Source: Euprymna scolopes (lineage: Eukaryota). From it: a stretch of DNA of 64,000 bases. How positions within the stretch are numbered: the first letter of the stretch is position 1; each line of letters opens with the position of its first letter. Positions 6,327 to 63,685 of the stretch are shown in pieces. Position numbers and translations under genes: made by a program. The notes beneath the pieces were generated by a model. It did not search any database. It was not told the DNA's origin and saw only the letters and a program-made list of their open reading frames with translations. Where the stretch lies: the NCBI GenBank assembly GCA_053919585.1, contig CM132797.1; one strand, 5' to 3'.

Positions 6327-6524
6327 ATCAGTGCCTTAAATATTTCTCCTAGAGTGTGTATTAAATCCACACCCTCCCGTCGCAAAATGCTCGAACCATC
6401 AGCTTGTTTACAAACAAATTAATAGTGGGCTTCGCTTAATCGCTTTAAATATGCGTCGGGTGAAAATATATTTACAAAGTGCTCAACCCAAAGAGGGGAG
6501 GGGGCTTTAATTGTCATCCACACC

Positions 6525-6609
6525 GTCGCGACACTGGACATGCTAATGTTTCGGACACATGGTTGGTAAAAAACACTAGTCCTCGTGTCAGGCGACTTAA
6601 AAAGTGTTT
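6525..6609 (-). ncRNA. Variant type I hammerhead with expanded core and pseudoknot
   Basis: GUCGC-CUGACACGA-GGAC(loop containing AGUGUUU)GUCC-GAAA-CAUUAG...CCAGUG-UC/GCGAC; upstream AAACACU (6603-6609) complements loop II. Confidence 0.75.
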
Positions 6610-7659
6610 GTCTCCCACAGAATAAAACCAGTTCTAAACCCTTGATTTGAGATCTGTAATTTTTTTTTTTTGAGTATTCAGTCGAACAATAAATTTAATT
6701 GTAAATTTTAACTTAGTTTTAATTTTCTTTNNNNNNNNNNNNNNNNNNNNNNNNNNNNNNNNNNNNNNNNNNNNNNNNNNNNNNNNNNNNNNNNNNNNNN
6801 NNNNNNNNNNNNNNNNNNNNNNNNNNNNNNNNNNNNNNNNNNNNNNNNNNNNNNNNNNNNNNNNNNNNNNNNCTCTCTCTATCTGTATCGCTCCATCTCT
6901 CTCTCTCTCTATATGCACACAAGCATACACGCACACACACACACGCACAACACGCACAACACATACACATATATATATATATATACACGCATGTATATAC
7001 GTAATCTGTCTAGTAAGTGATACGTACACAGTTTAAGCGAGTTTGCCGTACCAGTACGAAATTAGTGACCATTTGAAAAGAACAATAGATGTATTATTTG
7101 GTAAAAACCTTTTACAATAAACAGACAATGCCAAATGTACTATTTAGCGTTAAATGACCCAACGATGGTTGATATGCCGTAAAAGTCAAGAACATGGTGA
7201 ACGGGTGAAACTTGCGTCCATTTAATCCAATTCCCTCGATAATCATCTGTTTGCGAATAAGCGGCATCTGTCAAATATTGGTCTTGGCCTTTTTTCCGCT
7301 ATAAGGAAAACCATTGCGATTTCCTTGCTTTTGGAACTTTCCCGTTCGGTGATTTCTTTTTCATTTCATATAACAATATTTGCGAGTTTATCTTTTCTGG
7401 AACCGATTTCATGGAAGCAATTATATTGACAATTGCAACGAAGACGAAATTACAACATATAAAAACCTTTTTATGCCTGAAAATATCTCTGAACTGAAAA
7501 CCCACAGAAAAAAAGCAGGTATACCTCATGTTTAAAAGTCTTTTCTTTCACCATTACTCCTCTTTTTCAGTATCATTGTTATACGTGAATCGTTTCATAG
7601 CCTTAGAAACATACGAATCAAACACACATATATAAATAGATAAATACATGACTAAAAAA

Positions 7660-7931
7660 AGCTCCCCTCTTTGGGTTGAGCACTGTCGTAAATGTATTTT
7701 ACCCGTTTCTTATTTAACGATTAAGTGAAGCTCGATGTCTGTTTGTTTGTAAACAAAGTAGTAGCTCGAGAACTAGTAAGGATGGCTTATTTAATAAGCA
7801 TTTAGTGAATCAGTTGTGAGCACTGATCTATAGCCCTGTGGTTAGAACTGCCGATTGTCAACGCGTGGTTGTAGGTTCGATCCGCGACTTGCCGTTGTGA
7901 TACAACGAAACAGTACAGTATGTGGATGACT
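7660..7931 (+). mobile_element. Second copy of the tRNA-head/hammerhead element; 5' half of the ribozyme deleted
   Basis: Inverted homolog of 6195-6500; tRNA-like 7831-7886, then GTTGTGATACAAC-GAAACAGTACAGTA without CTGATGA. Confidence 0.8.
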
Positions 7932-7979
7932 ATATAAAGGAACACACACCGACTCACATATATACACACACATATATAT

Positions 7980-8043
<64 letters not shown>

Positions 8044-8049
8044 ATGTTG

Positions 8050-8582
8050 ATACTTCTCAAAGGGAAACTTTTGTTTGTGTGTGTGTGTTTGTATGTCGGC
8101 CAAAAACCTTAGACACACGCGACAAACATTGACAAAATCAATATCGTTTGAAAGGTCAGTCTCTCGCGTGACAAATATCCAAAGATTGGCTAAAATACAT
8201 TAATTCAGTGCTGATCAACTGAGTCTTTCTTTTTTGCAAGTAGGGGTCAGTTTTTGAGTCGACGTTTTACAAAGAGGTCATACGCTTTGCAATGATTAAC
8301 CTTATCTTGAACGGCCGTGACGTCGTAAGTCGTCGCGGTGGGCGCGGCGATTAAATTGTTGTTTTTTTTTGTTTTTTTTTACTTCTTTTCCTCTTAATGC
8401 TACAAGTTCGAGCTTGGCTACTGCGGCTATTTGGGGATGGGGGCGCTTGCACGGGTACTGGATGCTATTCTCATTTTTATTTTAGGGGGTTGGTTAAATT
8501 TTTTTGTTTCTCTCCTCTCTGTTCTACAATACCCTTACCATAACACATCTCCGCACCCGCGCAACACCAAGTACCCCGCTAG
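8050..8582 (+). mobile_element. Non-autonomous Helitron-like element
   Basis: GT microsatellite near the 5' end, GC-rich 3' segment ending CTAG|T; homolog on the minus strand at about 53890-54190. Confidence 0.6.
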
Positions 8583-8586
8583 TATA

Positions 8587-9464: not shown

Positions 9465-9690
9465 TAAAAACTTAGCCTTCCCACCAAAAGATGCACAGAA
9501 GTATTCTCTTATAGTCAAGGAAAGAATATTGGTTAATGGTCCTAAAACGCTAAACTGATCCAGAAATTGACTCATTTCGTTAGATTTATCGGCAAAACCG
9601 ATTCCCACTCTAAATTAAAAATATATAATAATTTTTTTCTTTGCTTTTCTTATCGCAAAGTTTATTCAAGGTGTTCAAGCGTAATCACCT
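9465..9690 (+). repeat. Dispersed repeat (second copy at 11985-12208)
   Basis: Roughly 80% identical direct copies by eye. Confidence 0.8.
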
Positions 9691-9710
9691 CCAGTAAATG
9701 TGCGCATCGA

Positions 9711-10334
9711 ATAGTTCCGACTACAAATAAAATAAAATAGTTCCGACTACAAATAAAATGAAATAGTTCCGACTACAAATAAAATGAAATAGTTCCGACT
9801 ACAAATAAAATAAAATAGTTCCGACTACAAATAAAATAGTTCCGACTACAAATAAAATAAAATAGTTCCGACTACAAATAAAATGAAATAGTTCCGACTA
9901 CAAATAAAATGAAATAGTTCCGACTACAAATAAAATAAAATAGTTCCGACTACAAATAAAATAAAATAGTTCCGACTACAAATAAAATAAAATAGTTCCG
10001 ACTACAAATAAAATAAAATAGTTCCGACTACAAATAAAATAAAATAGTTCCGACTACAAATAAAATAAAATAGTTCCGACTACAAATAAAATAAAATAGT
10101 TCCGACTACAAATAAAATGAAATAGTTCCGACTACAAATAAAATAAAATAGTTCCGACTACAAATAAAATGAAATAGTTCCGACTACAAATAAAATGAAA
10201 TAGTTCCGACTACAAATAAAATGAAATAGTTTCGACTACAAATAAAATGAAATAGTTCCGACTACAAATAAAATGAAATCGTTCCGACTACAAATAAAAT
10301 GAAATAGTTTCGACTACAAACAAAATGAAATAGT
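9711..10334 (+). repeat. 25-bp tandem satellite, about 25 copies
   Basis: Unit AATAGTTCCGACTACAAATAAAAT(A/G)A, no spacers. Confidence 0.97.
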
Positions 10335-10959
10335 ACTGAACAAAAGCAGATTCCTTTTAAATTATGTTAGAGATATAATGATAAATTTTGGAATACTGAA
10401 GATTATTTGTTCATTTTTATTTCTAGTTTCTACTCTAGAGACGGAATGAGGGGAACAAGCAAGATATAGTCCCTTTTAAATTTATGATTATCTTCCCTTC
10501 AGTTAATATGAAAGCTCCCACTCTTTTTCCACATTAAAGAATGAATTGTCTGCTTTACCATGTCTAATTATACAACCAAATGGATAGCAAAATCCGGAAG
10601 TCTTAAAGTGGAGACAATATTGACTACAGCTGAATGATTTGATGTCATTTCATGACGTCATACAATGAAATAATTTAATCACACCAGTTTTACACCGAAA
10701 CGTATAAAGGTTTTGTCTTGGAATACCTTCAATAAGAATCAAAAATCGATGATAAAAAAAAATCCGATTGAAGACAGAACAGTCAGATTTTGACCAAAGC
10801 TAACACTCTTATCACAAGTGCGCGTGAGCAGTTTTCTCACCGGCTCCATCATATAAAATCAACAGAAGGTTTGCTGATAAAACAAGAGCGTTTTTAAATG
10901 AATTTTTTTTTTGTTTAGAACCAAAATACATGGCTTCTGTATTTTAAACTATAATTTAA

Positions 10960-12556: not shown

Positions 12557-12595
<39 letters not shown>

Positions 12596-14220: not shown

Positions 14221-14649
14221 TATATGTGTGTATAAATATTCTGTGTGCTAGAACATTTATTTCTTAAATTCTATGCAATTAAGCAAGACTTAAAAATTAT
14301 GCGTGAATAGAATTAAGCGTAATAGTGAAATAAATCAATAATATATTAAGAAAACATAAATGATTAATTAACGTTCATTTTTAAAAGGAATATACTAATT
14401 AGTTAACCTTCATGTAGTCGCTCAGATATCCATGACTGAGTATATTAAAAAGTTCGTTTTAATAATTTTTAAATCGAAAAAGTAGGGTTTCAATATCAAT
14501 GTTATAGCGAGAAAAAATTCAACTTTGAATGCATGTAAATAATATGGTTACGGCTAGACTTACACACAGATTCATTATCTCCGTTTTTACACAATATTTC
14601 ATAGTAAAAAACAAAAATAGATGCTATAACTAAAAATATGTAAAATTTA

Positions 14650-15260
14650 AAAAAATATGTTAACTTCTTTCTAATTATAGAAGAAGCGGGAAGCAAGAAA
14701 CTTTCCCTCTAAAAATATGTTAACTTCTTTCAAATTATAGAAGAAGCGGGAAGCAAGAAACTTGCTCTCTAAAAATCTGCTAACTCCTTTCAAATTATAG
14801 AAGAAGCGGGAAGCAAAAACCTTTTCCTCTAAAAATATGTTAACTTCTTTCAAATTATAGAAGAAGCGGGAAGCAAGAAACTTGCTCTCTAAAAACCTGC
14901 TAACTCCTTTCAAATTATAGAAGAAGCGGAAAGCAAGAACATTTTCCTCTAAAAATATGTTAACTTCTTTCAAATTATTGAAGAAGCCGGAAGCAAGAAA
15001 CTTGTCCTCTAAAAATCTGCTAACTTCTTTCAAATTATAGAAGAAGCGAGAAGCAAGAAACTTGCTCTCTAAAAATCTGCTAACTTCTTTCAAATTATAG
15101 AAGAAGCGGGAAGAAAGAAACTTGCCCTCTAAAAATATGTTAACTTCTTTCAAATTATAGAAGCCGGAAGCAAGAACCTTGCCCTCTAAAAATATGTTTA
15201 CTTCTTTCAAATTATAGAAGAAGCGGGAAGCAAGAAACTTGCCCTCTAAAAATATGTTAA
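14650..15260 (+). repeat. 60-bp minisatellite, about 10 copies
   Basis: Unit CAAATTATAGAAGAAGCGGGAAGCAAGAAACTTGCCCTCTAAAAATATGTTAACTTCTTT; explains the repetitive 274-aa ORF. Confidence 0.95.
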
Positions 15261-16294
15261 TTTCCCAACGAAACTTTTTGCAAAGCGAAAAATTAGAGAA
15301 AATTAACTCAAGCTTCATTATATTTTNNNNNNNNNNNNNNNNNNNNNNNNNNNNNNNNNNNNNNNNNNNNNNNNNNNNNNNNNNNNNNNNNNNNNNNNNN
15401 NNNNNNNNNNNNNNNNNNNNNNNNNNNNNNNNNNNNNNNNNNNNNNNNNNNNNNTGGACCAAAGTACTGTAGGTTTGCAACCACAGAGTCCACATATAAA
15501 TGTAATATGTCTAAACTACTAGTCACTATCTTATGTAACTTTAGAACACTATTTTAGACACATTATAATAACATCCTACACTTTAGCCTAGAGTAAGTAG
15601 TTCTGGTTTTTTCCACCTTTAATATTATGTCCTCCTTCCGCCCCCAGTCAAAATCGCGATGAACTAAACACATACTAAAGATATTGTGCTTGATCCTTTC
15701 GTAACTGGATCATAAACTCATAGCAATAACACGGTCTTTCCATTTCCCGTTAAAAAACAATAAATTCTCCCTTCGAGAATTCCACTCTTCCTCATTGACT
15801 AAGAGCTGTCAATTCGATTATACCGGAATCTAATTCTTAATACATAAACAAACGCACCAGAACTTTTAAAATATGGCGACACTCTCTACAAGAGTAATAA
15901 AAAAAGAAGAAAAAATTAAATACTGATTACTTACACTTTTCTATGCACATATTAAACACATATCATTGCCCCCCACCCAACAAAAAGAAAATCAAAACAA
16001 ATATATACGAGTATCATTATTTATTTTTCGATTTTGGAGCGGCTTATCGAACCTTACACGATGCTATTTTTTCTTTTACTTTATTTTATAACGGGGCGAT
16101 TTTTTTTAATTTTTAAAAAAATTATGTTATACTTTTTTTTACATTTACTTTTAATGTGGACGATTTAAATTAGTTACATATTTTCTTACGATTTCAGCCA
16201 TGCTACTTATTTTGTCCGTATGAGTTTTCGACTATAAGAAAAAGAAAAAGAGAGTAAGCGAGTGTGAGAGAAAAGAAGAGAGTTGGGAAAATAT

Positions 16295-16329
<35 letters not shown>

Positions 16330-18403: not shown

Positions 18404-18431
<28 letters not shown>

Positions 18432-18434
<3 letters not shown>

Positions 18435-18811
18435 TATTTACAATAATAATTATTAAATACCAACAGACACTAGTGTTTCATCCTTTTGGGAATCATCAGT
18501 GCAGGCTGTCACGATTGATGCTAGTCGATAGATTCAAACAACAGCAGTCATGCCTAGCCTCATTAACAAGGACCTTAACCATTCGGCTACCGTCAACCGA
18601 GAGAGATACAATTGAAATTTTACATTTATTCTTATTAAATGCTTTCAACGTCAGTCAGAGTGATCTAATCATTATATGACGATCTGCGCGTATTAGCTAA
18701 GTTGACCGACTTTATTACAACTGGAAGTCCTCAACGATAAGAAACAAGTTTCTTAAAGGGGATGACATTATTATTTACTATAATAATTATTAAATACCTA
18801 CAGACACTAGT

Positions 18812-20149: not shown

Positions 20150-21328
20150 AAATTAATGTCGGAATCACTCAGGGGTTCAACCTGGGCTCAGATCTCTTCC
20201 TGATCTACATAAATTATCTCCCAAATAAAATCCTTCGATCATTTGTAGACATTTATATTGAGGACACTACCATCTATGGTAATACTTCAAAAGTTATAAA
20301 CAACCAAGTTCTCTGATTCTTTCTCCTCTGATATGCAATGGGGGAAAAGGTTGCTAGTTTATTACAATGCATCTAAAACCAAGCTTTCGTCGTTCCATCA
20401 TTAACGGTCTGATCCCCGTCCGGCATCAATTGAAACGAATGGCTTTCGTCTTTGGGGAGGCTCCATGTTTTGACAAGCTTCTGGGTCTGACCTTTACTCC
20501 TGATCTGAGATGGAACACTTACATCAAATCCGTTGCCAAGGCTGCTGGAAAAATGCTGGGATCGCTCGACCGCTTCAGCAGATAATCTCACTGCTGATGC
20601 AATTCTCTTCCTGTATAAGAGTCAAGTATGTCCAGGAACAAAGTACTTTTGCAACATCTGAGCAAGAAATGCTAAAACCAGCTTATCCTACCTTGCCAAA
20701 GTTCAAAACAGAATTCGTAGCCTGGTGGGGATGCCCTTTTCTCTTTTCTATAACCTCTTTCTCACAGAAGAGACGTTGCGAGCCTGTCTCTGCTTTATAG
20801 TTATTTTCATGCTCGTCTGAGCTCAAATCTGTGGTTTTCCCTGGCCTGACTTTCACGAAAATCACTCGTCTAGCTGAAACCATTTCTCTTCCCTGCAACC
20901 TCTCTCCCACAGAAGAGACGTTGCGAGCCTGTCTTTGTTTTATCGTTACTTCCATGGCAAGTGCTCGTCTGAGCTCTAATCTCTGGTCCCATCTCCTCGC
21001 CAATCTTTCACGATAAACACCCGTCTAGCTGAAACCACTGTCAAACATTTTCCCCACTCTTTATCTGTGTCAAAACCAAAACGTAGATTCCATGAACAAA
21101 GCTTTTTTCTTAGAAGTGCACGCCTGTGGAACTCTGTTCCGTGTGCCTGTTTCCCACCTGACTACAACTTGGATGTATTCAAGTCCAACATTAACAAATT
21201 CCTGATGAACCGCCCCCTTAAGTAAGATACTTTATCAAATCTCAAGACTAACGTACTATACACGCAATAACCCGTATCCCCGAGTTGCTTCCGGGCCTTG
21301 ATAAGTAGTGACCACCTTGTAAAAAAAA
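20150..21328 (+). pseudogene. CR1/L2-group LINE remnant (family A) with a local duplication of about 140 bp
   Basis: GITQGFNLGSDLFLIYIN..YIEDTT, LLGLTFTPDLRWNTYI; 20756-20890 duplicated at about 20900-21040; poly(A) end. Confidence 0.85.
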
Positions 21329-21339
21329 CATTAACAATA

Positions 21340-21633
21340 ATTTGTCTCACTCTTTATCTGTTCCTAAGCCTAAATGTTGATTCCGTGAGCAATGCTTCTG
21401 TCTTAGAACTGCACGCCCGAGGAACTCTCTTCGGTTTTCCGGATTTCCAACTGACTACAATATGACCGTCTTCAAGTCCAACGTAAACAAGTTCTTGATG
21501 AGCCGATCCCTTTAAGTAATACATTTTACCAAATTTACACTTCTAACGATTACTATGACGCACACTCATTAACCCTTATCCTCGAGTCGTCTCCGGGCCT
21601 TCAAAGTGGTGACTCGTTTATATAAAAAAAAAA
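21340..21633 (+). mobile_element. LINE family A 3' end
   Basis: Homologous to 1-296, with poly(A). Confidence 0.85.
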
Positions 21634-22811: not shown

Positions 22812-23300
22812 AACGTTTTGCCTTATATAGCTTCCGACCTTCTTCAGGTGAATTTTGTCAAAATCGGGAATCTTGTTGATTTTGTGAATTTCTGAACGGC
22901 CAATTTGCTTAATTCATAGAGAAAGTAGCATGTTCTCATTCCGTTAGCCATGCCAGGTAGAAGTATTAAGTAATTCGCAATTGTATTCTAAATATCGTCC
23001 GCACTGAGGATTGAACCTGAAACTGCTAGAAGAGTTTACGTATATCTGAATTTGACCTTTATGCGTTAAGCCTCGGTCTGAATGATACAAGTAATACAAT
23101 TTTGAATTACTTAGATTTATATCCAGTCATAGATAATGGAAGGAGAACGCGCCATTCTCTGTGTGAATTAAATTACGAAATTCGTTCTAAATTCCGTACA
23201 GATTGACGAATACGACAAAATGATTCCTGATTTCGATGATACACATGAATAAGATCGGAAGTTACATCGGCCGAAATGTTGTAAGAATAACACGCAAGAT
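22811..23300. repeat. Old head-to-head inverted pair of PLE-type hammerhead-like units
   Basis: Diverged arms of about 190-210 bp ending in CTGAAGAAGGTCGG...(G/A)AAACGTTG-like motifs; B-box-like GGATTGAACC in the spacer. Confidence 0.65.
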
Positions 23301-24464: not shown

Positions 24465-24704
24465 TATATATATATACATAATTTAAAGGGAGGGTTAAAA
24501 CAGTAGTGATAGTAAAATTACTAATTTAATTAAAATACAAGAAAAGAACAGTGCTCGTTGTAATTCAGATATATAATAAGCTCGATAGGAAAATATCCTA
24601 GAGCTACTTTAATATTTAGTAATGTGATTGATAATTTAAAATTCAAATTAGAATTAAAAATTAAAAATCTGTTTCATAAGAAGGAACAACAACAAAGTCA
24701 ATAA

Positions 24705-29689: not shown

Positions 29690-30630
29690 ATGCGAGTTTT
29701 CCTCACAACTTGCCCATAACGGTGCTCATCCTCCGTTCTGTTTCCACTAAGATCTTTCGATCACTCGGTTGTTTCAGTTAAGATAAAAACAAAACGTAAT
29801 AATCCTTCTACAATTAGAACACCATGGCTACAAAGTTGGTTAATTTTAATGCATTTAAAACCAATCTCTCTTTTCATCATAATCGTTCTGAGACCCATCT
29901 GACCCGAACTGTAAATTAATGGCGTTCGTCTTGGGGAAGTACTATGTTTAGACAAGCTTCTGATCTAAAATTGAATACATTCATAATCCGTTACCAGGAT
30001 TGCAGGAAAAATTATTGGATCATTCCACTATTCCAGTCGATATTTCACTGCCAATACAATCCTCTATCTATATAAGAGCCAAGTAATCCTAGATTGGAGT
30101 ACTGTTGCCACATCTGGGCAGGAGCTGCTCGGAGTATCTTATCTTGGCTCCACAGAGTTTAAAACCGGCTTCGAAACCTAGGAGGTGATGACATTTTCTT
30201 TTCCCGGCAGTCTCTTCCCCTGCGAGCCTGTTTCTGCTCTATCTATCAATGGCAAATACACGGCTGAGCTTCAATCTATTGTCCTCTTGCCAAACCTTTA
30301 CAAATAATACTCGTCTGTCGACAACTACTATCAATAATTTGTCTATGTATATGCCCAAGTCTAAACGCAATACCATGATTTTTATTCACACAGCTGTCCG
30401 TCTACGGAACTCTGTTATGCTGGACTGCTTTCCAACTGACTATAAAATGGTTGTCTTCAGGTTCATTGTACACATTTTCCTGTTGAGCTGTTCTCTTAAA
30501 TAATCAAGTTATATTAAATTTTTACCCCTAACTATTACTACGCTGTGTTCCTTATAACCACCATACACTCATTAATCCTTATCCTCGAGTGGTCTTCGGA
30601 CCTTGATAACTGGTAAATCTCTTGTCAAAT
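29690..30630 (+). pseudogene. CR1/L2-group LINE remnant (family A)
   Basis: LYLYKSQV..RLEYCCHIWAGA motif and family A 3' UTR. Confidence 0.8.
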
Positions 30631-31327
30631 AAAGATGAGCATAGTAGTCTGATAAATCAAAATAATAAAAAATAATGCGTGTTTATCTCAACAATTTGGA
30701 ATCATACGTGCAATTAAGCGAATATAATGAACCTTTATGAATAGTTATCAAAGTTCGGCATTATATAACCTCAACATTGGTTGATATGAAATTAAATTGT
30801 TAAACCAAGCCAAACGCTTTCATTTATCTTTTTTAATCCGTAAATAAAAAACTCATATATAAATCGCATTACAAACTTAACCTTTGTAGATTAAGGTTCA
30901 CAATATCAGAAACTGATTCATAAACCTTTGCTACTTCGAATAAATCAGTGATTTTATCGTAAAATAATCGTATAAAACTGGCATCCCCATTATATATCTA
31001 TGAAAAATATCTCGATTTAGTCGGGAAAAATGATTGCTCTGTGAGCCAGACTCTTTTCTAAAAAGCATCTTATCAGCCGACGTAGAACTATTAAAAATGC
31101 TATTAACCTCTTTTATTAACCTTTGTATAGGTCAGCCAGGCGCGTGTTATCAACAATGCCATCTCATAACGTATTCATAGAAAATCTAACCATTATTCAC
31201 GAATGGGACGCACGTGGCTCTCAGATAGAGTTTTCAAATCTGACGAGACAGAAATTTCGCCAAATGAAACATCCGTATGTGTTTTCTTGTGATAATGTGT
31301 ACCATTGTTTATGCAGTTATATCGAAA

Positions 31328-33184: not shown

Positions 33185-33700
33185 TGAATTATTCGGATTA
33201 TTAATCTCCTTTTGCCTGCTATTCGCGTTTCGGTTGATCTAACCTTCGACTTTCTTCAGGTGTATTTTGAACTCGGGATTCTTTACGTCGAACTCAGGAA
33301 TCTTTCTGTCGAACCCTAGAATCTATATGGAATTGTGAACTATATTTAATCCACGATGTTGATAAAGTATTTGGTTACTCAGTTGTCAGTTACACTCTTC
33401 TGGAATTAAAAGTTCAGTCTCTAGCTCGGGCAACACTCCAAAAATACAATTGCAAATTACTTAGGACCTCTATCTAATCTTGGCTGGCGCAACGAAAGCA
33501 TGCTGTCCCGATAAATTAAATGAAGGATTCTGTTCAAAAATCCGTGCAGATTCCCGAGTTGAACAAAACGATTCTCAAATTCGACAAAAAGATTACCATG
33601 TTTGACAAGATGCATTTGATTAAGGCCAGTTTTTACATTGGCCGAAACTTTGTATAAATAATGAGCATAAGGGTCAGAGTAGTCCAAATGATACAAATTA
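33185..33700. repeat. Second old head-to-head pair of PLE-type hammerhead-like units
   Basis: Minus: CCUGAAGAAAGUCGAAGGUUAGAUCAACCGAAACGCG (33224-33260); plus: UUGAUUAAGGCCA...UGGCCGAAAC (33616-33648). Confidence 0.6.
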
Positions 33701-35009: not shown

Positions 35010-35268
35010 CATTGGATACCCCTATAAGGGGTGGTTGCGCGTGTAATTGGGATTGTATAATCTTCGACCACACCTCTCCTGAATCGGCATTGCTTGAATC
35101 TAGTGGCAAGGAGAAATCCAGGACCACTGGTAACAATGCCGGGATAAGCAGAGAACACATACCACATATAGAATTCCAAATGGTTACCCATTTTAGTACC
35201 GACCAGGATCAACGTTTCTCAACATCGGTGATCTAACGGGAACGGTGTGTCAAAGTGATTATGGCGTA
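35010..35268 (-). mobile_element. 5S rRNA-derived SINE (SINE3-like) or 5S pseudogene with a structured tail
   Basis: 35156-35268 minus: TACGCCATAATCAC...GATCACCGATGTTGAGAAACG...GTACTAAAATGGGTAACCATTTGGAAT aligns by eye with 5S rRNA. Confidence 0.75.
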
Positions 35269-42597: not shown

Positions 42598-42850
42598 CTT
42601 TTACATTGTAGTCACCACTTATCAAGGCCCGGAGGCCATTCAGGGATAAGGGTTATTACGTGTACAGTCATCAATGGGATAATATGGTAGTAATTGTTAG
42701 TAATGGGGATTTGATAAATTGGATTACTTAAGGGGACCGTTTATCAGGAATTTGTTTATGTTGGACTTGAAGACATCCACGTTGTAGTCAGGTGGGAAAC
42801 AGGCAAACGGAAGAGAGTTCCACAGGTGTGCACTTCTAAGAAAGAAGCTT
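42598..42850 (-). mobile_element. LINE family A 3' end
   Basis: Reverse complement of the 1-296 type tail. Confidence 0.85.
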
Positions 42851-43924
42851 GTTACATGTTATTAATCTTTACACTGCCTCAGTCAGGAGGAAAAAAGCCC
42901 ATGGAAAACATGTCTGCTTCGCCTCGCAGTCAGAACTAAAGAGGTATTACTTTTTCTTATGACTCAATCGCATTATTTTCTGTCATTTTTGGAAATCGAC
43001 TTTCTCTCCGTTGCGCTACTACTCTTTCTTCAATCACAGCTCTGCAAATTGTAAACTTTGTTTGACATAATGTACGTATTAACACATTAAATATTGTAAA
43101 AATGATTTCGAAGACGTGTTTGACATAAGGAGAAAACTATGTATACAACTATAAGACCCATCGCGTACATCTTAATGAATAAATGTAAAAGTGGACTCAA
43201 TTTTTTGCACTAACTATAAAGTCGAAACAAAGTGTAGCATCTGTTCTTCAGATGCTGCGCTTCAATTTCATGTTATCTTTAAGTGGAGGAGAGATCCTTT
43301 ACGACTGAGACAATTTTTACTTTTGTTAGCTTTCTCTGTCCTATGGGAGGCATTGTAAATAGGAAGTATAAATCGAAACGTCATATTTCAAGATAATCCA
43401 CATTTAATTCTATTCTCTATTTTATATACTGTTAATGTATATGCGATATCAGTCGCAGGCTTTACTAATTTGCGTACTGGTTTGAAAAAAAAAACGACAT
43501 TTTATTAATCAACTATTTTTTAAAGTATTATTTGGATTTTAATATAGCAAAAATTTCTCTTTTGCAATATTTTTTTCTGAACATATATTTAGCAATTGTG
43601 TTCAAATGTTTTTTTTCTTTTTACGGAAGTTTATCTGAATTTTAACATGTTGCAATCTATTTCAAATTTACAAGTTGTTTCATTTTTTTTTTGTCTTTTC
43701 TCTACGGTCACATTTACAAGATAAATAATATTGTATCGAAATTAACGAAATTTGTACTTTTTATCTCATGTGAATAAATAAGAAAAAATGAATTTACGTT
43801 TAAAGTATTCGAACCAATGGAATTTGCGAGATGATAGCGAGCCAGCAAATAGAGCGGCTTATTACATAAATATAATCGACATCTACAACTAGCCCCTCCC
43901 CCTTGGTCAAAACAGAGTTTTCAA

Positions 43925-45078: not shown

Positions 45079-45151
<73 letters not shown>

Positions 45152-45205
45152 AGTGGTGAAAATACTAGACTAGAGTGCTCAATGTGTAGCCAGAGCAGTA
45201 TATAA

Positions 45206-45421
45206 GAAATTTATTACTGTGAGTCCAGAATGAGTTTACATATTGTTTCAGCTAGAGGAAAATCCTCAAAAAGAAGAAAAGATATCCGACTAGCATCGTC
45301 AGAATTCATAGATGGCCCATCTATGAATTCTGACGATGCTAGTCGGATATTTGCTCTTCTTTTTGAGGATTTTCCTCTAGCTGAAACAATATGTGAACTC
45401 ATTCTGGACTCACAGTAATAA

Positions 45422-45426
<5 letters not shown>
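45206..45426. ncRNA. 221-bp near-perfect palindrome made of two head-to-head hammerheads
   Basis: 110-bp arms, 1-nt centre (45316), 4 mismatches; each arm reads AUGAAUU-CUGACGA-UGCUAG...CUAGCU-GAAA-CAAUAUG-U(A/G)/AACUCAU. Confidence 0.8.
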
Positions 45427-45474
<48 letters not shown>

Positions 45475-46925
45475 TCCTATATATTTAGGGTTTTTTATAT
45501 TGATATTCATGCGCACTGTTATAAGCTCCACTCACATATAAAAAATTTGTTAAAGGTGATAACGTACGTACAAATACAAAAATATGTGAAAGATTAAAAC
45601 CTAGTCTAAGCATTAATGCGTGTGAAAAAGTATAACGTATGTAGAAAGATTAACGGTAACCCCTCACTCGAGAGAAGGTGGTTAAGGACTCTTATTTCTC
45701 TAGAATTCTCGACTCGTGTCATCTAGTCTCCTCTGAGGTTGTTACCTGAAATCTGGTATGCTGAAAGCGAATATCGAAGCGGCAGGCAGGAAGAAATACA
45801 AACAATTGTAGTCTATCTACAGAAGCTTAATTTTCACAAAATTATGTACAAAAATGTTTTTACAATTCTCATTCAATTCGTAGTAAGTTTTTCCAAAGTC
45901 TCAAATCTCTTCACAGACACGACAGACGGTTGGATGAGGTAGGTGGAGGGGGCCCCTCTCCAGGGAATGGCAGGTTTATACGACCTGTTCTCCTCGAATT
46001 CAACAAGCAATCCGTTTAATTTTAGAGCGCATCGACCCGATGTGGGAGTGGTGTAAGTCTAACCAGCCAATCAAATCACGCTAAACCCCAACTATCTGAG
46101 ACCCCATTCAAGACTAAAAATCCCATAACCTCGAAGTCATCAACCATCACTCAGCCAGTACGATATGTTCAGCTAACATCCTCGCATTTCCTGTTATTGA
46201 GTTTTCCCCAAATAACAAAATATCTCAGGTCTTCCAACCCCCAAAAAAACAACAAATATATCCATTTTGACAGTGAATTAAAATATATCTATATTTATCT
46301 TCTCTATCTTAAATCCTTGGTTTATCTGGCGTCACCCGGGAATACAAAGCTACCTCAGCGTAGTTCTAACGCTCCTCAATGGGGGATTACGTTACAGCCT
46401 GTAAAAAGTGATTCCGTGTGAAAGGTGATAATGTACGTTCAAACATGAATGTATGTAAAGGTTCTCCTTTTCGAGAAGTGAAATTTCTTGTTATACGAGA
46501 AGTTAAAAATATTTCTTTTGGGGATATTCTCTGCTCTATCCAGGATATTAAGCATTTGGATTATAGCTCCATCTAAGAGCTTTGGGCAATTCTTGTACTT
46601 ACGGAGACCTCAAGAGCACTACTAAAACCAATTTTCTAATCCAACCCCTAGAAAAGAAATTATAAACATTATTAGTGAAAAAAATAGAAAGCCTGCAGAG
46701 CGCTATTTAAATCGCTAAATATAATTAAATATACCTCCAGTGTATAACTAAACTAGGTGCCCCTTTTTTTCCTTGTAATTAAAAACATAAATAAATTCAC
46801 ACAAAATATTTTTCGACTTCATTTCAACATGAAATGTTTGCTAGAAATGATATCGTGACGTTAGAATTTCAGACAATGACATTGTGACAAGCGATCTTAC
46901 AGAATTTTAGAATTGTATATATATA

Positions 46926-46959
46926 TGATGAGTCCTAGACGACGAAACACGTGTCAGTG
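46926..46959 (+). ncRNA. 5'-truncated minimal hammerhead within (TA)n
   Basis: UGAUGA-GUC(cuagac)GAC-GAAA-CACGUG-UC/AGUG; C3 and the 5' strand of stem I replaced by TA repeat. Confidence 0.7.
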
Positions 46960-46976
46960 GATAATTATATTTGAAA

Positions 46977-49269: not shown

Positions 49270-49322
49270 TAAGCTTCACAGAATATTCCTCGTTTCATTT
49301 TCGTGAGAATTCGTCAGGCTTA
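49270..49322 (-). ncRNA. Hammerhead copy with a mutated cleavage triplet
   Basis: UAAGC-CUGACGA-AUUC..AAAU-GAAA-...GUG-AA/GCUUA; GUA changed to GAA relative to 1241-1303. Confidence 0.7.
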
Positions 49323-49425
49323 CGTTATTTTCAATAATTTACTACCTAGCTCTACCAATGTATTGAGCACTGTTGAAGTAAATACTGAAAATTTACGCAT
49401 GAAATTATATCTTCATATATTAATT

Positions 49426-49836
49426 TAGGGGACGATTCCAATATTTTTCTCGATTCCGATACAATTACCGATTTCGTGCTTAATTCCTGATTTTGATTCT
49501 TTATAAATCTCTAAATACTTAGTTGTATTATTTATCTGATTACCGTAAAACACACACATGTTAAATGTGCAGCTATTTTCCTAAACGTAAAAATATACTT
49601 GTGGGGGAAGATCTATCGATGTTAACTTCACTGGTGGTTTTCAAATCAATAAATATTTATTATTTTATCATTATTACCAGCAATGAAAGATTTTGCTTTA
49701 AACAAAACAAAATAAAAACAGCGATTGAAAGAATCGTTTTGACATCGGGAAATCAGTACAATTTTTTTCGATTCCGATACCCTCAAATATTCCGATTTTT
49801 CTGATTCTCGATTCTGATTCCAATGCATCGTCCCTA
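49426..49836. mobile_element. MITE-like element, possibly hAT-derived
   Basis: TIR-like TAGGG(G)ACGAT...ATCGTCCCTA with subterminal (C)GATTC repeats; TSD not clear. Confidence 0.5.
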
Positions 49837-56489: not shown

Positions 56490-57022
56490 AGTAATGCTGC
56501 CACATCTGGGTAGGGGCTTTTCACAGTACCCATCCTGCCTGATCAAGGTTCAAAACCGGTTTTAAAGTCAAGAAAGCGAGTTCTTTTTATCGTTATTACA
56601 ACCTTAATATCATAGAATAAGAGACGCTACGCGTCTATCTCTGCTCTATCGTCATTTTGTTGAAAATGGTTGCCCTTGCAAAAAATTCACAAAAAACACT
56701 CGTTTTTATAAAACCAGCTTCCCATACACTCTCTGTGTACTAAACGCGAAATTCCATGAACAAATTGTTTATTTTTTAACTATACGACTGTTAACCTTTG
56801 TACTGCTTAACTGCTTTCCAACTGATTACAACATGGTTATTTTCAGGTCCAATGTAAACAAATCTTTGCTTAATCGTCCTCTTAAATATTCGAATTCTAC
56901 CTAATTTCATCCACTACCGAATATTACGGTATTATTACACCGAATAGATGGCAGTAATTAAATTTTATTCTTACGTTGCATTCAGACCTTGATAAGCGGT
57001 AATTCTCTTGTAATAAAAAAAA
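56490..57022 (+). mobile_element. Old LINE family A 3' portion
   Basis: CCHIW-like motif and CFPTDYNMVIFRSNVNK; tail with poly(A). Confidence 0.7.
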
Positions 57023-58441: not shown

Positions 58442-58484
58442 TAACTTGTATCTTATCTTTTTAAGATTATATTTTAAAACTCTC

Positions 58485-58972: not shown

Positions 58973-59039
<67 letters not shown>

Positions 59040-59441: not shown

Positions 59442-59501
<60 letters not shown>

Positions 59502-60426: not shown

Positions 60427-61721
60427 CGAGGGGTGTGCAATAAGTAATGCCCCTGACCCACTTCCCATAGGAATAGAGCAACGAAACTTGGCATAGTTAT
60501 TAGTCTTTCTCTTCATAGGAATCACACAGAGTTATGTACTTCTCCCATCGTTTGATGCAGCTCTAGAGACCGTTTTTGTAGAACACCCCAGGTTGGTCCT
60601 TCAACCACGACGTGACTTCAGAAATCAAGGCTGCATCATCTGGGAAACAAACGCTTTCATTTCAAAAACAACTTAATGGCTGGGAAGAGGTGAAAGTCAG
60701 AGGGTGCAAGGTCAGGAGAGTAGGGAGGATGGGGAAGGATTTCATAATCACACGCCCGTGCTTCTGATCTGGCGACATGCGAGTTGTGGACCGGAGCGTT
60801 GTCTTGCAGGAGGAGGGCATCTTTACTGATCTTGCTCCACCTCTTGATTTTGATAGCTTCCCTTAATTTCCTTAAAAGTGAAGCATAATTGGCTCCTGTA
60901 ATTGTGGTACCCTTTGCCAGGAAATCTGTCATCACTACTCCGTCCTGGTCCCAGAAGACTGTGAGCATGGCCTTGCCAGCGGAGGGCTGAACTCTTGCCT
61001 TCGTTGGAGGTAGTGAGTGCAAGTCCTTCCACTGCATTGACTGGGCTTTGGTCTCTGGATCATAGTGATGGATCCAGGTTTCATCCTGTGTAATCAGTAT
61101 TTGTAAAAACTTTGACTCATCTTCTTGGCACATCTCCAAATTCATCCTCGAGCACTCGACGCGTTCTCGCTTCTGGAATGGTGTAAGCAACCTGGGAATC
61201 CATCTGGCAGCCACCTTTTGCATATGCAAATGGTCATGAATTATAGTTTTCACAGACCCCGTACTAATCTTGACATCTTGGTCTATTTGGCGAATAGTAA
61301 TGCGCTGATCTTCCAAAATGGCAGCCTCAACTTGACGAACAGATTCCTCATCAATGACAGAAGGGAGCGACCAGGTTTAGGTGCTGTTTCCACAGACTTC
61401 CGGCCATGTTTGAATTCACAATGCCAGCGTTTTACAAGGTCATATGATGGTGCATTATCACCATAAGTTTCTTTCATTTCATCAAAAGTCTCCTGTGGTG
61501 TGCGTCCTTTCAAATAGAAAAACCGGATCACTGCTCGACATTCAACAGGCTCCATTTCACACCTGACTCAGTTCAAGCACCTGTAAAACAGAAACCACAA
61601 TTACTTTAAAGTTGTAATTTGCCACATAACCCGTAGAGATTTAAATAATTGCACATTCAAATTTTCAGCTTGATCAGACAACTGAAGTGGGTCAGGGGCA
61701 TTACTTATTGCACGCCCCTCG
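60427..61721 (-). mobile_element. Full-length mariner (DD34D) transposon, 1295 bp, transposase disrupted
   Basis: 38-bp TIRs CGAGGGG(T/C)GTGCAATAAGTAATGCCCCTGACCCACTTC, TA TSD on both sides; WIPRLL, TQDETW, QDNAPVH..(34)..YSPDLAPSD; split over ORFs 61283-61555 and 60657-61316. Confidence 0.97.
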
Positions 61722-61756
61722 TATTGTGAATGTAAGATATATATACTGGCAGGACT

Positions 61757-61812
<56 letters not shown>

Positions 61813-63246
61813 CTAGCATGGGTACCCGGCGTTGACTGCGTTGGCATGAAGTTCTGCTTTGAACACACCTGCTATACAAATCATTTTCATCAGGGACAAC
61901 GTGGATACCCCCACAACAATTCCAAAAATAAAAGAACGGATAAAAACATCGCCCCCAAAAAGAAGTATGCGATACCATTTCCACCAGATATCTCGGCAGA
62001 AGGGATACAAAGAGAAGAAAATATTCTCCGGATATTGAGCACTGGAAAGACCCCACCAATCGCAAAAAAAAAATAGCCAAGTAGGCAGAACCCCTAAAAA
62101 AATTAAGATCTACCAAAAATGAATTCCCAAAACAATTAAATGAAATTTTTCATCATTGTAATTCCCTCACTCTATGTAACTTATATTTTGGGGTTCATTT
62201 TGTTTATGAATTTGTTAGTTGAAAGTACAGAGTGGTATCATAAAAATTAATTAAATTTATCGTTATTTTATGTTTTAAATGTAATTTCTGCCCCCTTAAA
62301 AAAACAAACAAACAAATTGTATTTGTCATGTTTTGCCCCCCCCCTTCGATTGCCAAACTTGAACAGATGATAGAGGTGACATGTCTCGTTGAACGCTTGG
62401 TGGCCAAAATGTGGGTGCTCATTTTACGTTAAATTAATATGGAAAACTGATCCACCACTCCAAAATGTTAATTTTTTTTTCTTTTCCAAATTTATTTCGT
62501 ATTATTTATAAAGGCTATTTAAACTTTTAGGCCAAAAAAAGTAGATCCTTATTTTTTTAGGTGGGTCACAGCGTAAAAAAAATTACCGATTTCTGTATAG
62601 CCGTTAACATAGAATAATAAAAACAAACACATGAAATCTTTTCTTCAGTTTTTCGTAAGTGTTTTTTTAATATTAAAAAAAAACAATAAAAGCCAAACAT
62701 TTTTCTATCTACTCAGAATTATTTTTTCAAGCTAGAAATTCATTGAGATTACCAAATTATTTTATTAATTGATAGTTTTTATTTTTTGTTTATGCTCCGA
62801 AGGTGCAAATAACTCTAAAAAAAATATTTCTAAAAAATCGATGTTTGAATAATAATTCCAAATAAATTTAATTAAATATGTTATCAATATAATTATTGTT
62901 TCAAATTTATTAAATAACGATTTTAAATAGAACACTTATAACGAATCTCTCGCTAGAAACATTAACTAAGATACCGCTATTTAACAAAATCAGTTTTTCT
63001 TAATGTAATATGCAAATGAGATGATCTCTTTATTGTATCTAGTTTGCAAGAATCATGCTATATATAGAAATAGATGAGAGAGTAAAGTAAGGCACCTTTT
63101 GTATATATTAATCAAATTGTGAACAAACAAACAAACAGACACGAATACGAAATCTGAGGTTATTATTTTCCAGAGATTAAGTAATCAATGAAGTTTAACG
63201 AGGTTAATACAAGAGTGCTACAATTCCGAAGTAGAGCAGTGTATAC

Positions 63247-63554
63247 TCTTTATGTGTTTTTACATAAGCAAAAATATGTTGCTATAATCATGAGCATATT
63301 TTGGTTAGCTAGCTACTAGTAACTAGAGACTTCTTCGGTCGATACAGCTTATACGAAAGCAAAGTTAACAATGAAAAGAAGACCTGATGTTTTCATTGCA
63401 ACCGTTGCTTTCGTATAGGGTGAATGCTTATTCGCTGGTGCTGAAGAATTTATACGCTCATTAGCCGGAGAGATCTCTAGTTACTAGTTGTTAGCTGGCC
63501 GAAACATGCTCATGACTGTGTAGCAACATATTACAGCTTATGTAAAAAATAAAG

Positions 63555-63555
<1 letters not shown>
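63247..63555. repeat. Imperfect palindrome of about 310 bp with a decayed hammerhead-like right arm
   Basis: TTTTTACATAAGC..AATATGTTGCTA..TCATGAGCAT..CTAGTAACTAGAGA and its complement; GGCC-GAAA-CAUG...UGUG-UA at 63497-63522. Confidence 0.7.
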
Positions 63556-63592
<37 letters not shown>

Positions 63593-63685
63593 GGCAGTAA
63601 AGTTTAGTTTCCTAGAAGTACATTCAATGAAACATATTGTGTCTACCAAAAAGTGCTCAATGAGTAAACAAAGCAGGTATATTAA

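What the first reader, a model, noticed from the sequence alone, without database searches (positions are those of the whole stretch)
6478..63676. Shared AGTGCTCAA...GAGC(AG) stem-loop across unrelated ribozyme elements
Found at 6478 (+), 7684 (-), 45174 (+), 49371 (-), 63214 (+, AGTGCTACAA) and 63652 (+, ends AAGCAG), with looser versions at 1353 (-) and 24550 (+). GCTC pairs with GAGC about 12 nt later and the loops vary. It lies about 7-10 nt before each of the three long palindromes at 45206, 63247 and 63686, and close to hammerheads elsewhere, although those elements share no other obvious sequence. Inference: a common cis signal (RT or endonuclease recognition, priming or promoter element). 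I know of no description of it.
Basis: partly seen in the sequence, partly recalled or inferred. Interest (0 to 1): 0.8.

Follow-up and report, generated by a model that had tools for sequence, protein, structure and literature searches.

The report
Conserved hairpin marking retrotransposon copy-start sites
The repeated AGTGCTCAA...GAGC motif is the mirror image of a small conserved RNA hairpin that follows the self-cutting ribozyme in one group of Penelope-like jumping genes and their small hitch-hikers. Genomic copies end about four letters before it, so it most likely tells the element's enzyme where to start copying RNA into DNA.

Summary
AGTGCTCAA occurs 6 times in the window against 0.3 expected. 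AGTGCTCAA-N8-12-AGAGC occurs about 92,000 times in this 5.9-Gb cephalopod genome against about 400 for a control.

The RNA hairpin is GCUC-(variable inner stem-loop)-UU-GAGCACU, and base pairs covary.

The hairpin lies 20-50 nt downstream of the hammerhead cleavage site in Penelope-like elements (PLEs) of the Hydra clade, and in SINE-like and retrozyme-like elements that depend on them. Full-length elements carry two copies between the ribozyme and the ORF start. Four PLEs from other organisms have the same layout.

Truncated insertions end in (TA)n about 4 nt before hairpin 1 (no "tail") or about 4 nt before hairpin 2 (with "tail"). This explains the one-tailed palindromes.

It matches the internal initiation of reverse transcription and the "tail" shown biochemically in 2024 for a lizard PLE. 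The hairpin is therefore most likely the signal that positions the reverse transcriptase; this is inferred, not shown.

I found no description of the motif. I rate it a new variant of a known kind. The scan had already noted the palindromes and hammerhead elements of this genome, but not this motif.

The parts
45174..45196 (-). Hairpin box 1 of family C (sense on the - strand: GCUC UG GCUACA CA UU GAGCACU)
   Evidence: About 2,900 exact copies of this family's box in the genome.
45151..45173 (-). Rest of the 'tail' of family C, ending at the distal 3' end against (TA)n (45082-45150)
   Evidence: tail length 24-31 nt, mode 27, in 30 genomic copies.
45199..45433 (.). Palindrome made of two head-to-head 5'-truncated copies. 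The arm without a tail ends at (TA)n at the position that abuts box 1. Hammerhead cores at 45245-45302(-) and 45330-45387(+).
   Evidence: I6: 117-nt arms, 96% complementary.
63652..63674 (-). Hairpin box 1 of family D. This copy has a G-to-A change that gives a G.U pair in the sense RNA.
   Evidence: About 3,900 exact copies of the family box.
63589..63651 (-). Tail of family D up to the distal end next to (TA)n
   Evidence: 59-61 nt in most of 28 copies.
63678..63902 (.). Palindrome of two inverted truncated family D copies. Hammerhead core at 63812-63852(+).
   Evidence: I11.
63214..63237 (-). Older box variant with a one-base insertion (GCUCUAC...GUAGCACU)
63240..63552 (.). Older, degraded palindrome following that box (approximate limits). 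Hammerhead core at 63441-63505(+). Ends in (TA)n.
49349..49371 (+). Hairpin box 1 of a subfamily of family B, the most abundant family and the 3' end of an endonuclease-coding PLE
49372..49447 (+). Tail of that copy (approximate end)
   Evidence: tail of 75-77 nt in family B.
49292..49317 (-). Hammerhead core of the inverted partner copy
1332..1354 (+). Degenerate copy of the same family B subfamily box. Partner hammerhead core at 1268-1293(-).
7661..7684 (+). Box 1 of family A, with inner stem CCC/GGG. Belongs to a tRNA-headed, hammerhead-tailed SINE/retrozyme-like unit.
7764..7824 (+). Second, longer box-like hairpin of the same unit (GCUC ... GUGAGCACU). Its 3' half overlaps the start of the tRNA-like head.
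   Evidence: read by eye.
6478..6505 (-). Box 1 of the second, inverted family A copy. The 5' half is degraded. Hammerhead core of the unit at 6215-6239(-).
24550..24604 (-). Variant family: GCUC UAGGA UAUUU UCCUA UC GAGC, followed 30 nt later by CGAGCACU. The same family occurs in locus L038.
18726..18761 (-). Box variant (...GAGGACU, with an 8-bp inner hairpin) inside a 337-nt retrozyme-like unit. The unit's hammerhead core is at 18475-18499(-). The insertion's 3' end at (TA)n lies just 5' of where the next box would begin.

Best explanation
The motif is the antisense image of a small structured RNA element. The element is a hairpin: a conserved closing stem GCUC/GAGC, a variable inner stem-loop, a conserved two-U bulge on the 3' side, and a conserved single-stranded ACU after it.

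It belongs to Penelope-like retrotransposons of the Hydra clade and to the non-coding elements that use their machinery. In a full-length element two such hairpins lie between the hammerhead ribozyme and the start codon.

Proposed mechanism (inferred). The element's telomerase-related reverse transcriptase binds a hairpin. It then starts cDNA synthesis on the template about 4 nt upstream of the hairpin's base, primed by a nicked (TA)n target. A start at hairpin 1 gives a copy without a tail. A start at hairpin 2 gives a copy whose 3' 'tail' is hairpin 1 plus the spacer. If both DNA strands of one target are primed, one from each hairpin, the result is the head-to-head palindrome with a tail on one side only.

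Shown: the anatomy, the strand, the conservation, the covariation, and the coincidence with both classes of insertion ends.

Inferred: that the hairpin is what the enzyme recognises.
For: 1. Abundance and families. 92,041 hits against 404 control. There are several families with different loops.

2. Strand and host element. Long family B copies run on the complementary strand into an ORF with a GIY-YIG-type C-terminus. The order there is stop, CCAAT/TATA, hammerhead, about 37 nt, box, 75 nt, (TA)n.

3. Full-length young element (L094, intact 708-aa ORF). The hammerhead CUGAUGA core lies at -226 from ATG, with the predicted cut about 43 nt further on. Box 1 is at -136..-118 and box 2 at -51..-31.

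4. Same layout in four PLEs from other organisms (L097, L088, L099, L100). These are absent from this genome, or only about 70% alike over the RT core.

5. Structure. In 16 of 20 family-level boxes, at least 2 inner pairs stack on the closing stem when a 2-nt bulge is allowed. The sum is 56 against 11.3 +/- 3.7 in shuffles (0 of 5000). Other registers give 1-19, and the antisense strand gives 38. On 16 aligned boxes 94.6% of cells pair, against 87.2% in shuffles (0 of 500), and 4 of 7 pairs show double changes. These include G-C to A-U at the outermost pair in L099. Inner hairpins of 13 bp (L097) and 7 bp (L088) replace the short loop.

6. Ends.
- In palindromic copies the tail-less arm ends 1-4 nt from box 1 in most cases.
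- In 244 read-through family B copies (0 in the control), the usual distal end is followed within 7 nt by a second box.
- For the young family, (TA)n abuts positions 3-6 nt 5' of box 1 and 4 nt 5' of box 2, in RNA-library contigs and reads.
- K-mer depth rises about 1000-fold between a point just 5' of box 2 and the start of the hammerhead.

7. Precedent. A lizard PLE initiates reverse transcription internally at two adjacent sites in a stem-loop about 85-90 nt downstream of its hammerhead cut, and the 'tail' is the stretch between those sites (PMC11167929).

8. Non-coding families keep the box (family D about 560 nt; family A; the 337-nt unit at 18.4-18.8 kb). This argues for a role in mobilisation rather than in translation.
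Against: - No binding or initiation assay exists for these elements.
- The hairpin is thermodynamically weak (-5 to -6 kcal/mol for the short forms). The 183-nt leader as a whole does not fold better than shuffles (z = -1.6).
- Three of the four closing pairs never vary, so they say nothing about structure. Families are related by descent, so covariation events are fewer than rows.
- Exact junctions are blurred by up to about 8 nt wherever the element sequence next to the box is itself TA-rich (families C and D).
- One full-length copy (L094) ends at a (TA)n stretch far from any box, so not every 3' end fits.
- L095, L096 and L087 showed no clear box.
- RNA-library contigs may contain DNA.
Confidence: 0.6

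Rival explanations
1. The box is recognised as double-stranded DNA by the element's GIY-YIG endonuclease. This directs nicking next to existing copies and so produces tandem and inverted arrays. The RNA hairpin would be incidental.
For: For Drosophila virilis Penelope the 'tail' was reported to be required for endonuclease recognition of a plasmid target (as summarised in PMC11167929). Copies are often clustered, tandem or inverted.
Against: Most insertions lie in plain (TA)n with no box on the target side. Inner stems covary while their sequence is free. G.U pairs occur on the sense strand only (56 against 38 pairs; GU:2). That is what an RNA fold predicts, not a duplex DNA site.
Confidence: 0.12
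2. The hairpin is an RNA 3'-end-forming or processing signal. Template RNAs would really end a few nucleotides before it, and ordinary end-primed reverse transcription follows.
For: This would also place the insertion ends just 5' of the boxes.
Against: The box and sequence beyond it are present in RNA-library contigs that run through into the ORF (records 1 and 9). The only biochemistry available for a PLE shows internal initiation on longer RNA. No poly(A) or other end signature was seen at these positions.
Confidence: 0.1
3. The hairpins serve translation of the ribozyme-cleaved, uncapped mRNA, since box 2 ends 20-31 nt before the start codon.
For: The distance to ATG is constant in five elements. 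RNA 5' ends map to the hammerhead cut, so the mRNA may be uncapped. From my own knowledge, ribozyme-processed R2 RNAs use their 5' structure for translation.
Against: Non-coding families keep box 1 and are far more numerous than coding copies. This reading does not explain why insertion ends coincide with the boxes.
Confidence: 0.08
4. It is a promoter element: a Pol III box A / tRNA D-arm relic, or a Pol II initiator next to a TATA-like stretch.
For: GCUC...GAGC is also the D-stem of many tRNAs. TATA-like sequence adjoins the box in families C and D. Family A carries a tRNA-like head.
Against: ARAGORN finds no tRNA-like gene. No box B lies at the right distance in families B, C, D or G. The box lies downstream of the CCAAT/TATA region and of the ribozyme, inside the transcript. 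The adjoining TA-rich stretch merges with the (TA)n target. What is conserved is a covarying hairpin, not the box A consensus.
Confidence: 0.04
5. It has no function: a slowly decaying block inherited from one ancestral element.
For: All carriers belong to one PLE lineage or depend on it. Most of the 92,000 copies are dead.
Against: Flanking UTR sequence is unalignable between families and between organisms whose proteins are only 35-45% identical. Yet the 9-nt 3' half is nearly invariant, the pairs covary, and the position relative to ribozyme, ATG and insertion ends is kept.
Confidence: 0.05

Closest known systems
PLE 'tail' and internal initiation of reverse transcription (Poseidon element PAc of Anolis; Frangieh et al. 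2024, PMC11167929)
   Same: There are two alternative start sites downstream of the hammerhead. An optional extension lies between them and is present at one end of insertions. Initiation occurs at a stem-loop, with no homology to the AT-rich target. Both DNA strands are used.
   Different: The clade differs (Hydra, not Penelope/Poseidon). The sequence differs: GCUC...UU-GAGCACU rather than an 'AC-rich' stem-loop. The sites lie in the 5' leader before the ATG rather than 111-118 nt inside the ORF. The tail is 50-100 nt rather than 30-40. Two separate copies of one motif each sit about 4 nt from an end. There is no biochemistry here.
Hydra clade of Penelope-like elements (Craig et al. 2021, PMC8557442)
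   Same: Single ORF of about 700 aa. C-terminal endonuclease without CCHH. CxCX5C linker, DKT and RWK motifs. Canonical hammerhead. Insertion into (TA)n. Aquatic invertebrate hosts including molluscs.
   Different: That paper, as far as I read it, describes no conserved UTR hairpin. The young squid family has tandem units of about 4.4 kb, longer than the '<3 kb' given as typical.
3'-tail stem-loops shared by stringent-type LINEs and their SINEs (e.g. eel UnaL2/UnaSINE1; my own knowledge)
   Same: A short conserved hairpin is shared by an autonomous element and its non-autonomous riders, and is required in cis for recognition by the reverse transcriptase.
   Different: Those sit at the very 3' end, next to a short repeat tail. 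Here the hairpin lies on the 3' side of an internal start site and is itself excluded from the shorter class of copies.
Non-LTR retrozymes of animals (Cervera and de la Pena 2020, PMC7229834; Li et al. 2026 preprint 10.64898/2026.07.22.740005)
   Same: Small non-coding units with a type I hammerhead, thought to be mobilised by PLEs and related to PLE pLTRs. The units at 6.2-7.9 kb and 18.4-18.8 kb of the window look like this.
   Different: Those papers centre on the ribozyme and on circular RNAs. Neither paper came up in my full-text search for the motif string; I read only the preprint's abstract and outline, not their full texts. Here most copies are single truncated or palindromic insertions rather than long tandems.
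Telomerase RNA protein-binding hairpins beside the template (my own knowledge; PLE RTs are the sister group of TERT according to PMC8557442)
   Same: A hairpin next to the copied region would anchor the enzyme and fix where copying starts.
   Different: This is analogy only. No reiterative copying is shown, and the hairpin lies 3' of the start rather than forming a 5' template boundary.

Membership tests
Penelope-like element, Hydra clade | Reverse transcriptase domain | tested here: met
   YRDD motif at about residue 346 in all nine aligned ORFs. An AlphaFold model (pLDDT 73) matches DRT9, retron, G2L4, LINE-1 ORF2p, R2 and telomerase RTs at Foldseek probability 1.00, E 3e-6 to 1e-3. Pfam finds nothing at its cut-off.
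Penelope-like element, Hydra clade | C-terminal GIY-YIG endonuclease lacking the CCHH motif | tested here: met
   VVYQ...YIG...R...H...E...N pattern. The domain model (pLDDT 87.6) has T4 EndoII (five of the six best hits are GIY-YIG nucleases), I-TevI and Hpy188I as best hits, probability 0.84-0.98 but weak E of 0.04-0.3. No CCHH was seen by eye.
Penelope-like element, Hydra clade | Linker CxCX5C; DKT instead of DKG; RWK motif; CxxC and CxH flanking the conserved E and N | tested here: met
   CNCx5C at about 565, DKT at about 114, RWK (KWK in the squid) at 37, CxxC at about 666 and CxH at about 696 in P0152 and most of the seven full-length relatives (DKT not found in P0170/P0024, RWK not in P0058; the two short fragments do not cover the N-terminal motifs). 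Criteria are from PMC8557442 section 11. No phylogeny against reference Hydra families was possible.
Penelope-like element, Hydra clade | Canonical hammerhead ribozyme in the untranslated region | tested here: met
   CUGANGA, helix II, GAAA, helix III and a GUH cut site with pairing helix I were read in families B, C, D, G, L097, L099 and L100. Five reads in one single-cell RNA library (X23) place template-switch-marked RNA 5' ends at the predicted cut of the young family. Rfam gave no hit at gathering score in the window and one weak Hammerhead_1 hit.
Penelope-like element, Hydra clade | Insertion into (TA)n; 5' truncation; partial tandems; inverted 5'-truncated partner; one-sided tail | tested here: met
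   (tandem spacing about 4.4 kb, head-to-head pairs).
PLE internal reverse-transcription start signal ('tail' boundaries) | Two alternative 3' ends of insertions downstream of the hammerhead, with the tail between them | tested here: met
   Proximal end about 4 nt before box 1 and distal end about 4 nt before box 2, in families B and G. Proximal end within 1-11 nt in families C, D and E.
PLE internal reverse-transcription start signal ('tail' boundaries) | The reverse transcriptase binds the element and initiates there | not testable with these tools
   This needs protein-RNA binding and in vitro initiation assays.
tRNA-derived Pol III promoter (box A / D-arm) | tRNA-like cloverleaf or box A plus box B at 30-60 nt | tested here: not met
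   ARAGORN found 0 genes. No box B follows the motif in families B, C, D or G. Only family A has a separate tRNA-like head, about 135 nt away.
Conserved central domain of a SINE superfamily (e.g. Ceph-SINEs) | Sequence identity to the published Ceph domain; central position in a tRNA-headed SINE | not tested
   No Ceph-SINE sequence was available in the tools (one search gave papers only). The motif is terminal and leader-located, and it also occurs in coding PLEs, which argues against this filing.

The most novel reading that the evidence does not exclude
The hairpin is a telomerase-RNA-like anchor. The PLE reverse transcriptase, sister of TERT and predicted to be a dimer, binds the two hairpins of one RNA. 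It aligns the nicked (TA)n 3' ends of both DNA strands on the short, mostly UA-rich stretch just 5' of each hairpin, and starts two cDNAs. That would explain three things at once: the tail, the one-tailed head-to-head palindromes, and the strict (TA)n association. It would also define a minimal cis module (hairpin plus about 4 nt) sufficient to make any RNA a PLE template.
Probability: 0.2. Interest if true: 0.8.

Novelty: new variant of a known kind. Interest (0 to 1): 0.6.

Why it matters
Penelope-like elements are a third major class of eukaryotic retrotransposons. Their copying mechanism is the least understood. A single 2024 study showed internal initiation and explained the 'tail', but it left open what in the RNA the enzyme recognises.

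This work supplies a concrete candidate. It is short and conserved across organisms, it covaries, and its two copies coincide with the two classes of insertion ends. It also spans autonomous elements and their SINE-like and retrozyme-like dependants.

That makes the question directly testable by mutating about 25 nt. It explains the many one-tailed hammerhead palindromes in (TA)n of cephalopod genomes. It gives annotators a marker for PLE boundaries, which are notoriously hard to call.

Tried and rejected
- **Rfam.** At gathering score there was nothing in the window. At E <= 1 there were only microsatellite artefacts and one weak Hammerhead_1 hit.
- **ARAGORN.** No tRNA. The resemblance to a tRNA D-arm or box A was therefore dropped.
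- **First idea: MITE, Helitron or Tc1 terminal repeat, or a Ceph-SINE core.** Dropped once copies proved to have one fixed end, variable truncation and a ribozyme on the other strand.
- **TATA-box/promoter reading of the sequence next to the box.** Dropped because the TA-rich stretch is the junction with the (TA)n target.
- **Word-indexed protein search with the endonuclease ORF.** No hit. The exhaustive HMMER search then found 4,369 relatives.
- **Pfam on the ORFs.** Nothing at cut-off. PDB sequence search: nothing.
- **Contigs without a clear box in the sequence held.** L087, L095 and L096. L098 is too short. L093 has a box after a hammerhead-like motif with a core change, but I did not check it against this genome.
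- **L091/P0152.** Taken at first for another species, it is this species' own young family, 99-100% identical.
- **Junction pattern with an anchor specific to one copy.** It gave 0 hits and is uninformative.
- **Further genome loci.** I did not try to get round this.
- **Supplement of PMC11167929.** It holds no sequence to compare.
- **Context fold of the leader.** Both hairpins are predicted, but the overall z-score is only -1.6. RNAalifold kept only the 4-bp closing stem.

Full report
**1. The observation**

AGTGCTCAA occurs six times exactly in the 64-kb window. Dinucleotide-preserving shuffles give a mean of 0.32, and none of 100 reaches six. The sixth, 62035-62043(-), has no GAGC partner and lies beside a mariner transposase ORF, so I treat it as chance.

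The window is AT-rich, at about 32% G+C. Earlier notes of this scan identify the genome as a 5.9-Gb cephalopod.

Genome-wide, AGTGCTCAA-N8-12-AGAGC has 92,041 hits against 404 for the reversed control. No motif site, tail or palindrome touches an assembly gap. The gap at 6731-6872 lies between two copies, and nothing was inferred across it.

**2. What the copies look like**

I examined thirty loci from the genome-wide search and sixty more from two family-specific searches.
- a (TA)n microsatellite;
- a family-specific stretch of fixed length, about 27 nt in family C, 60 in D and 76 in B;
- the motif;
- a body of variable extent;
- very often an inverted copy of that body, which makes a palindrome with a variable centre;
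- (TA)n again.

Sites 6478/7684 and 49371/1353 are copies of two such families, so the eight sites amount to about six families. The body carries the reverse complement of a type I hammerhead.

One fixed end, variable truncation at the other, an inverted truncated partner and (TA)n targets are the published hallmarks of Penelope-like element (PLE) insertions (PMC8557442).

**3. The host element**

Long family B copies continue on the sense strand into an ORF ending in a GIY-YIG-type domain. Downstream of the stop come two CCAAT boxes, a TATA box, the hammerhead, about 37 nt, the motif, 75 nt and (TA)n.

An exhaustive HMMER search with that domain found 4,369 relatives. One of them, P0152, is 99-100% identical to many intact copies in this genome. 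Open frames reach 750 aa, tandem spacing is about 4.4 kb, and head-to-head pairs occur.

These proteins carry the motifs that Craig et al. give as diagnostic of the Hydra clade: RWK/KWK, DKT, YRDD, CxCX5C, and CxxC and CxH around the conserved E and N. Pfam recognises nothing. However, a model built from nine aligned ORFs matches reverse transcriptases, including telomerase, R2 and LINE-1 ORF2p. The C-terminal domain model matches GIY-YIG nucleases best, weakly but consistently.

**4. Position in a full-length element, and in other organisms**

In a full-length copy of the young family (L094), read in sense:
- the hammerhead CUGAUGA core lies 226 nt before the ATG, and the predicted cut about 43 nt after the core;
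- box 1 is at -136 to -118;
- box 2 is at -51 to -31.

Four Hydra-type PLEs on metagenome contigs have the same order: hammerhead, box 1, box 2, ATG. Two are from Tara Oceans (L097, L088) and two from other ENA assemblies (L099, L100). In all four, box 2 ends 20-31 nt before the start codon.

These contigs are not from this genome. L097 and L088 match it only at about 70% over 100-240 nt of the RT core (about 190 nt for L097, 105-240 nt for L088). L099 and L100 do not match at E <= 1e-8. Their source organisms are unknown.

**5. Structure**

In sense the motif reads GCUC, inner stem-loop, UU, GAGCACU. The inner part differs between families but pairs in nearly all of them. Examples are UAC/GUA, UGC/GUA with a G.U pair, UG/CA, CCC/GGG, CUG/CAG, UCAC/GUGA, a 13-bp helix in L097 and a 7-bp helix in L088.

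For 20 family-level boxes, the run of inner pairs stacked on the closing stem sums to 56 when a 2-nt 3' bulge is allowed. Shuffles give 11.3 +/- 3.7, and 0 of 5000 reach 56. Other bulge sizes give 1-19, and the antisense strand gives 38.

On an ungapped alignment of 16 boxes of 23 nt:
- 94.6% of cells pair, against 87.2 +/- 1.7 in shuffles (0 of 500);
- four of seven pairs show changes on both sides;
- slid registers pair in 10-61% of cells;
- the outermost G-C becomes A-U in L099.

The G.U pairs fall on the sense strand, which favours an RNA fold. The hairpin is weak on its own, and the whole leader is not unusually stable. A protein partner is therefore likely.

**6. The link to insertion ends**

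In palindromic copies, the arm that lacks the family-specific stretch and the box ends against (TA)n 1-4 nt from box 1. This held in 14 of 22 element-derived palindromic cases and within 18 nt in the rest. In family B the end is exact, four nucleotides before GCUC.

I then predicted that the other, distal end should sit just before a second box. A pattern search found 244 read-through family B copies and none in the control. In these copies the usual distal end is followed, after at most 7 nt, by a second box with inner stem CUG/CAG.

For the young family, reads and contigs of four RNA libraries laid on L094 show three things:
- (TA)n abuts positions 3-6 nt before box 1 and 4 nt before box 2.
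- Summed k-mer depth rises about a thousand-fold between a point just 5' of box 2 and the start of the hammerhead.
- In five reads, a template-switch oligo is joined exactly to the first nucleotide after the predicted ribozyme cut. This indicates self-cleavage in vivo.

These libraries may contain some DNA, and contigs cannot show strand or level. The junctions, though, are informative either way.

**7. Interpretation**

Frangieh et al. (PMC11167929) showed that a purified lizard PLE protein starts reverse transcription internally. It uses two adjacent sites in a stem-loop downstream of the hammerhead, without homology to the AT-rich nicked target, and on both DNA strands. They also showed that the genomic 'tail' is the stretch between the two sites.

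The squid data reproduce that geometry and add a specific, conserved, duplicated hairpin whose base lies about 4 nt 3' of each end. I therefore read the hairpin as the signal that positions the reverse transcriptase. Under this reading, the tail is box 1 plus the spacer up to box 2. The one-tailed palindromes result from priming on the two DNA strands from the two hairpins. That last step, and binding itself, are inferences.

Non-coding families keep the box:
- family D, about 560 nt;
- the tRNA-headed unit at 6.2-7.9 kb;
- the 337-nt unit at 18.3-18.9 kb.

This fits a role in mobilisation in trans.

**8. Rivals**

- **Recognition of duplex DNA by the endonuclease.** This is possible, given an older report for Drosophila Penelope. 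It does not fit the covariation, the sense-strand G.U pairs, or the plain (TA)n targets.
- **An RNA 3'-end signal.** This would place the ends equally well, but contigs read through the boxes.
- **A translational role.** The fixed distance to the ATG suggests it, but it explains neither the ends nor the non-coding carriers.
- **A promoter or tRNA-like reading.** It fails on position and on ARAGORN.
- **Pure inheritance without function.** It fails on cross-organism conservation amid unalignable flanks.

**9. Novelty**

Full-text searches found no paper that holds the motif together with Penelope or hammerhead. They found no other work on PLE initiation signals besides the 2024 study. The class, the clade, the ribozyme, the (TA)n preference, the tail and internal initiation are all known. 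The hairpin, its duplication and its 4-nt relation to both ends appear to be new.

I built no consensus of any element or ORF, and I singled out no copy for any use.

Noticed in passing
window 60657-61316 (-): ORF of 219 aa with a mariner-type transposase domain (Pfam Transposase_1, E 4e-21). The stray exact AGTGCTCAA at 62035-62043(-) lies just beyond it.
   Followed up: partly
window 35151-35272 (-): Full-length match to 5S rRNA at 30 bits, below Rfam's gathering score of 38. It may be a 5S pseudogene or a 5S-derived repeat.
   Followed up: no
window 46919-46962 (+): This is the only Rfam Hammerhead_1 hit in the window (23.7 bits, E 0.27). It is not next to a box. The clearly readable hammerheads of the palindromes were all missed by Rfam, probably because of their long helices.
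   Followed up: no
window 23004-23023 (+), 31240-31270 (+), 33227-33259 (-): Hammerhead-core candidates with no box nearby. They may be tail-less copies, other families or chance matches.
   Followed up: no
L094:3688, 3811-3817, 3845 (+ strand, i.e. antisense to the PLE): Template-switch-oligo reads mark RNA 5' ends pointing away from the ORF, upstream of the hammerhead (11-40 reads each in run X24). This suggests divergent transcription from the element's promoter region.
   Followed up: no
L094 (G000:C20:109435000-109439600): The intact young PLE copy sits between two arms of an inverted repeat of more than 700 nt. Its own 3' side ends at an internal (TA)n far from any box and carries a SINE insertion. 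This arrangement is not explained by the model.
   Followed up: partly
L088:1035-1126: Both boxes of this foreign PLE share the same departure from the usual GAGCACU (GAGCUCU). This looks like concerted change, as expected if one protein reads both.
   Followed up: no
L095:700-957: There is no standard box. But GUACUCAG, directly after the hammerhead-like cut, is complementary to CUGAGUAC 38 nt before the ATG. This is a possible long-range pairing enclosing the leader.
   Followed up: no
window 1-288, 21067-21633, 30345-30636, 56731-56927, 42708-42871: There are several copies of another short interspersed repeat ending in an A-rich tail. It is unrelated to the box and is also seen inserted in L019 and L094.
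   Followed up: no
window 9574-10443 and 14531-15250: Two long tandem arrays, with periods of 26 nt and 60 nt. The second lies inside a 274-aa ORF (14671-15495, -) that runs into an assembly gap.
   Followed up: no
L031:8200-8330: The family B 3' UTR has two CCAAT boxes and a TATA box about 30-40 nt before the hammerhead. The pseudo-LTR promoter would then start transcripts just upstream of the ribozyme.
   Followed up: partly
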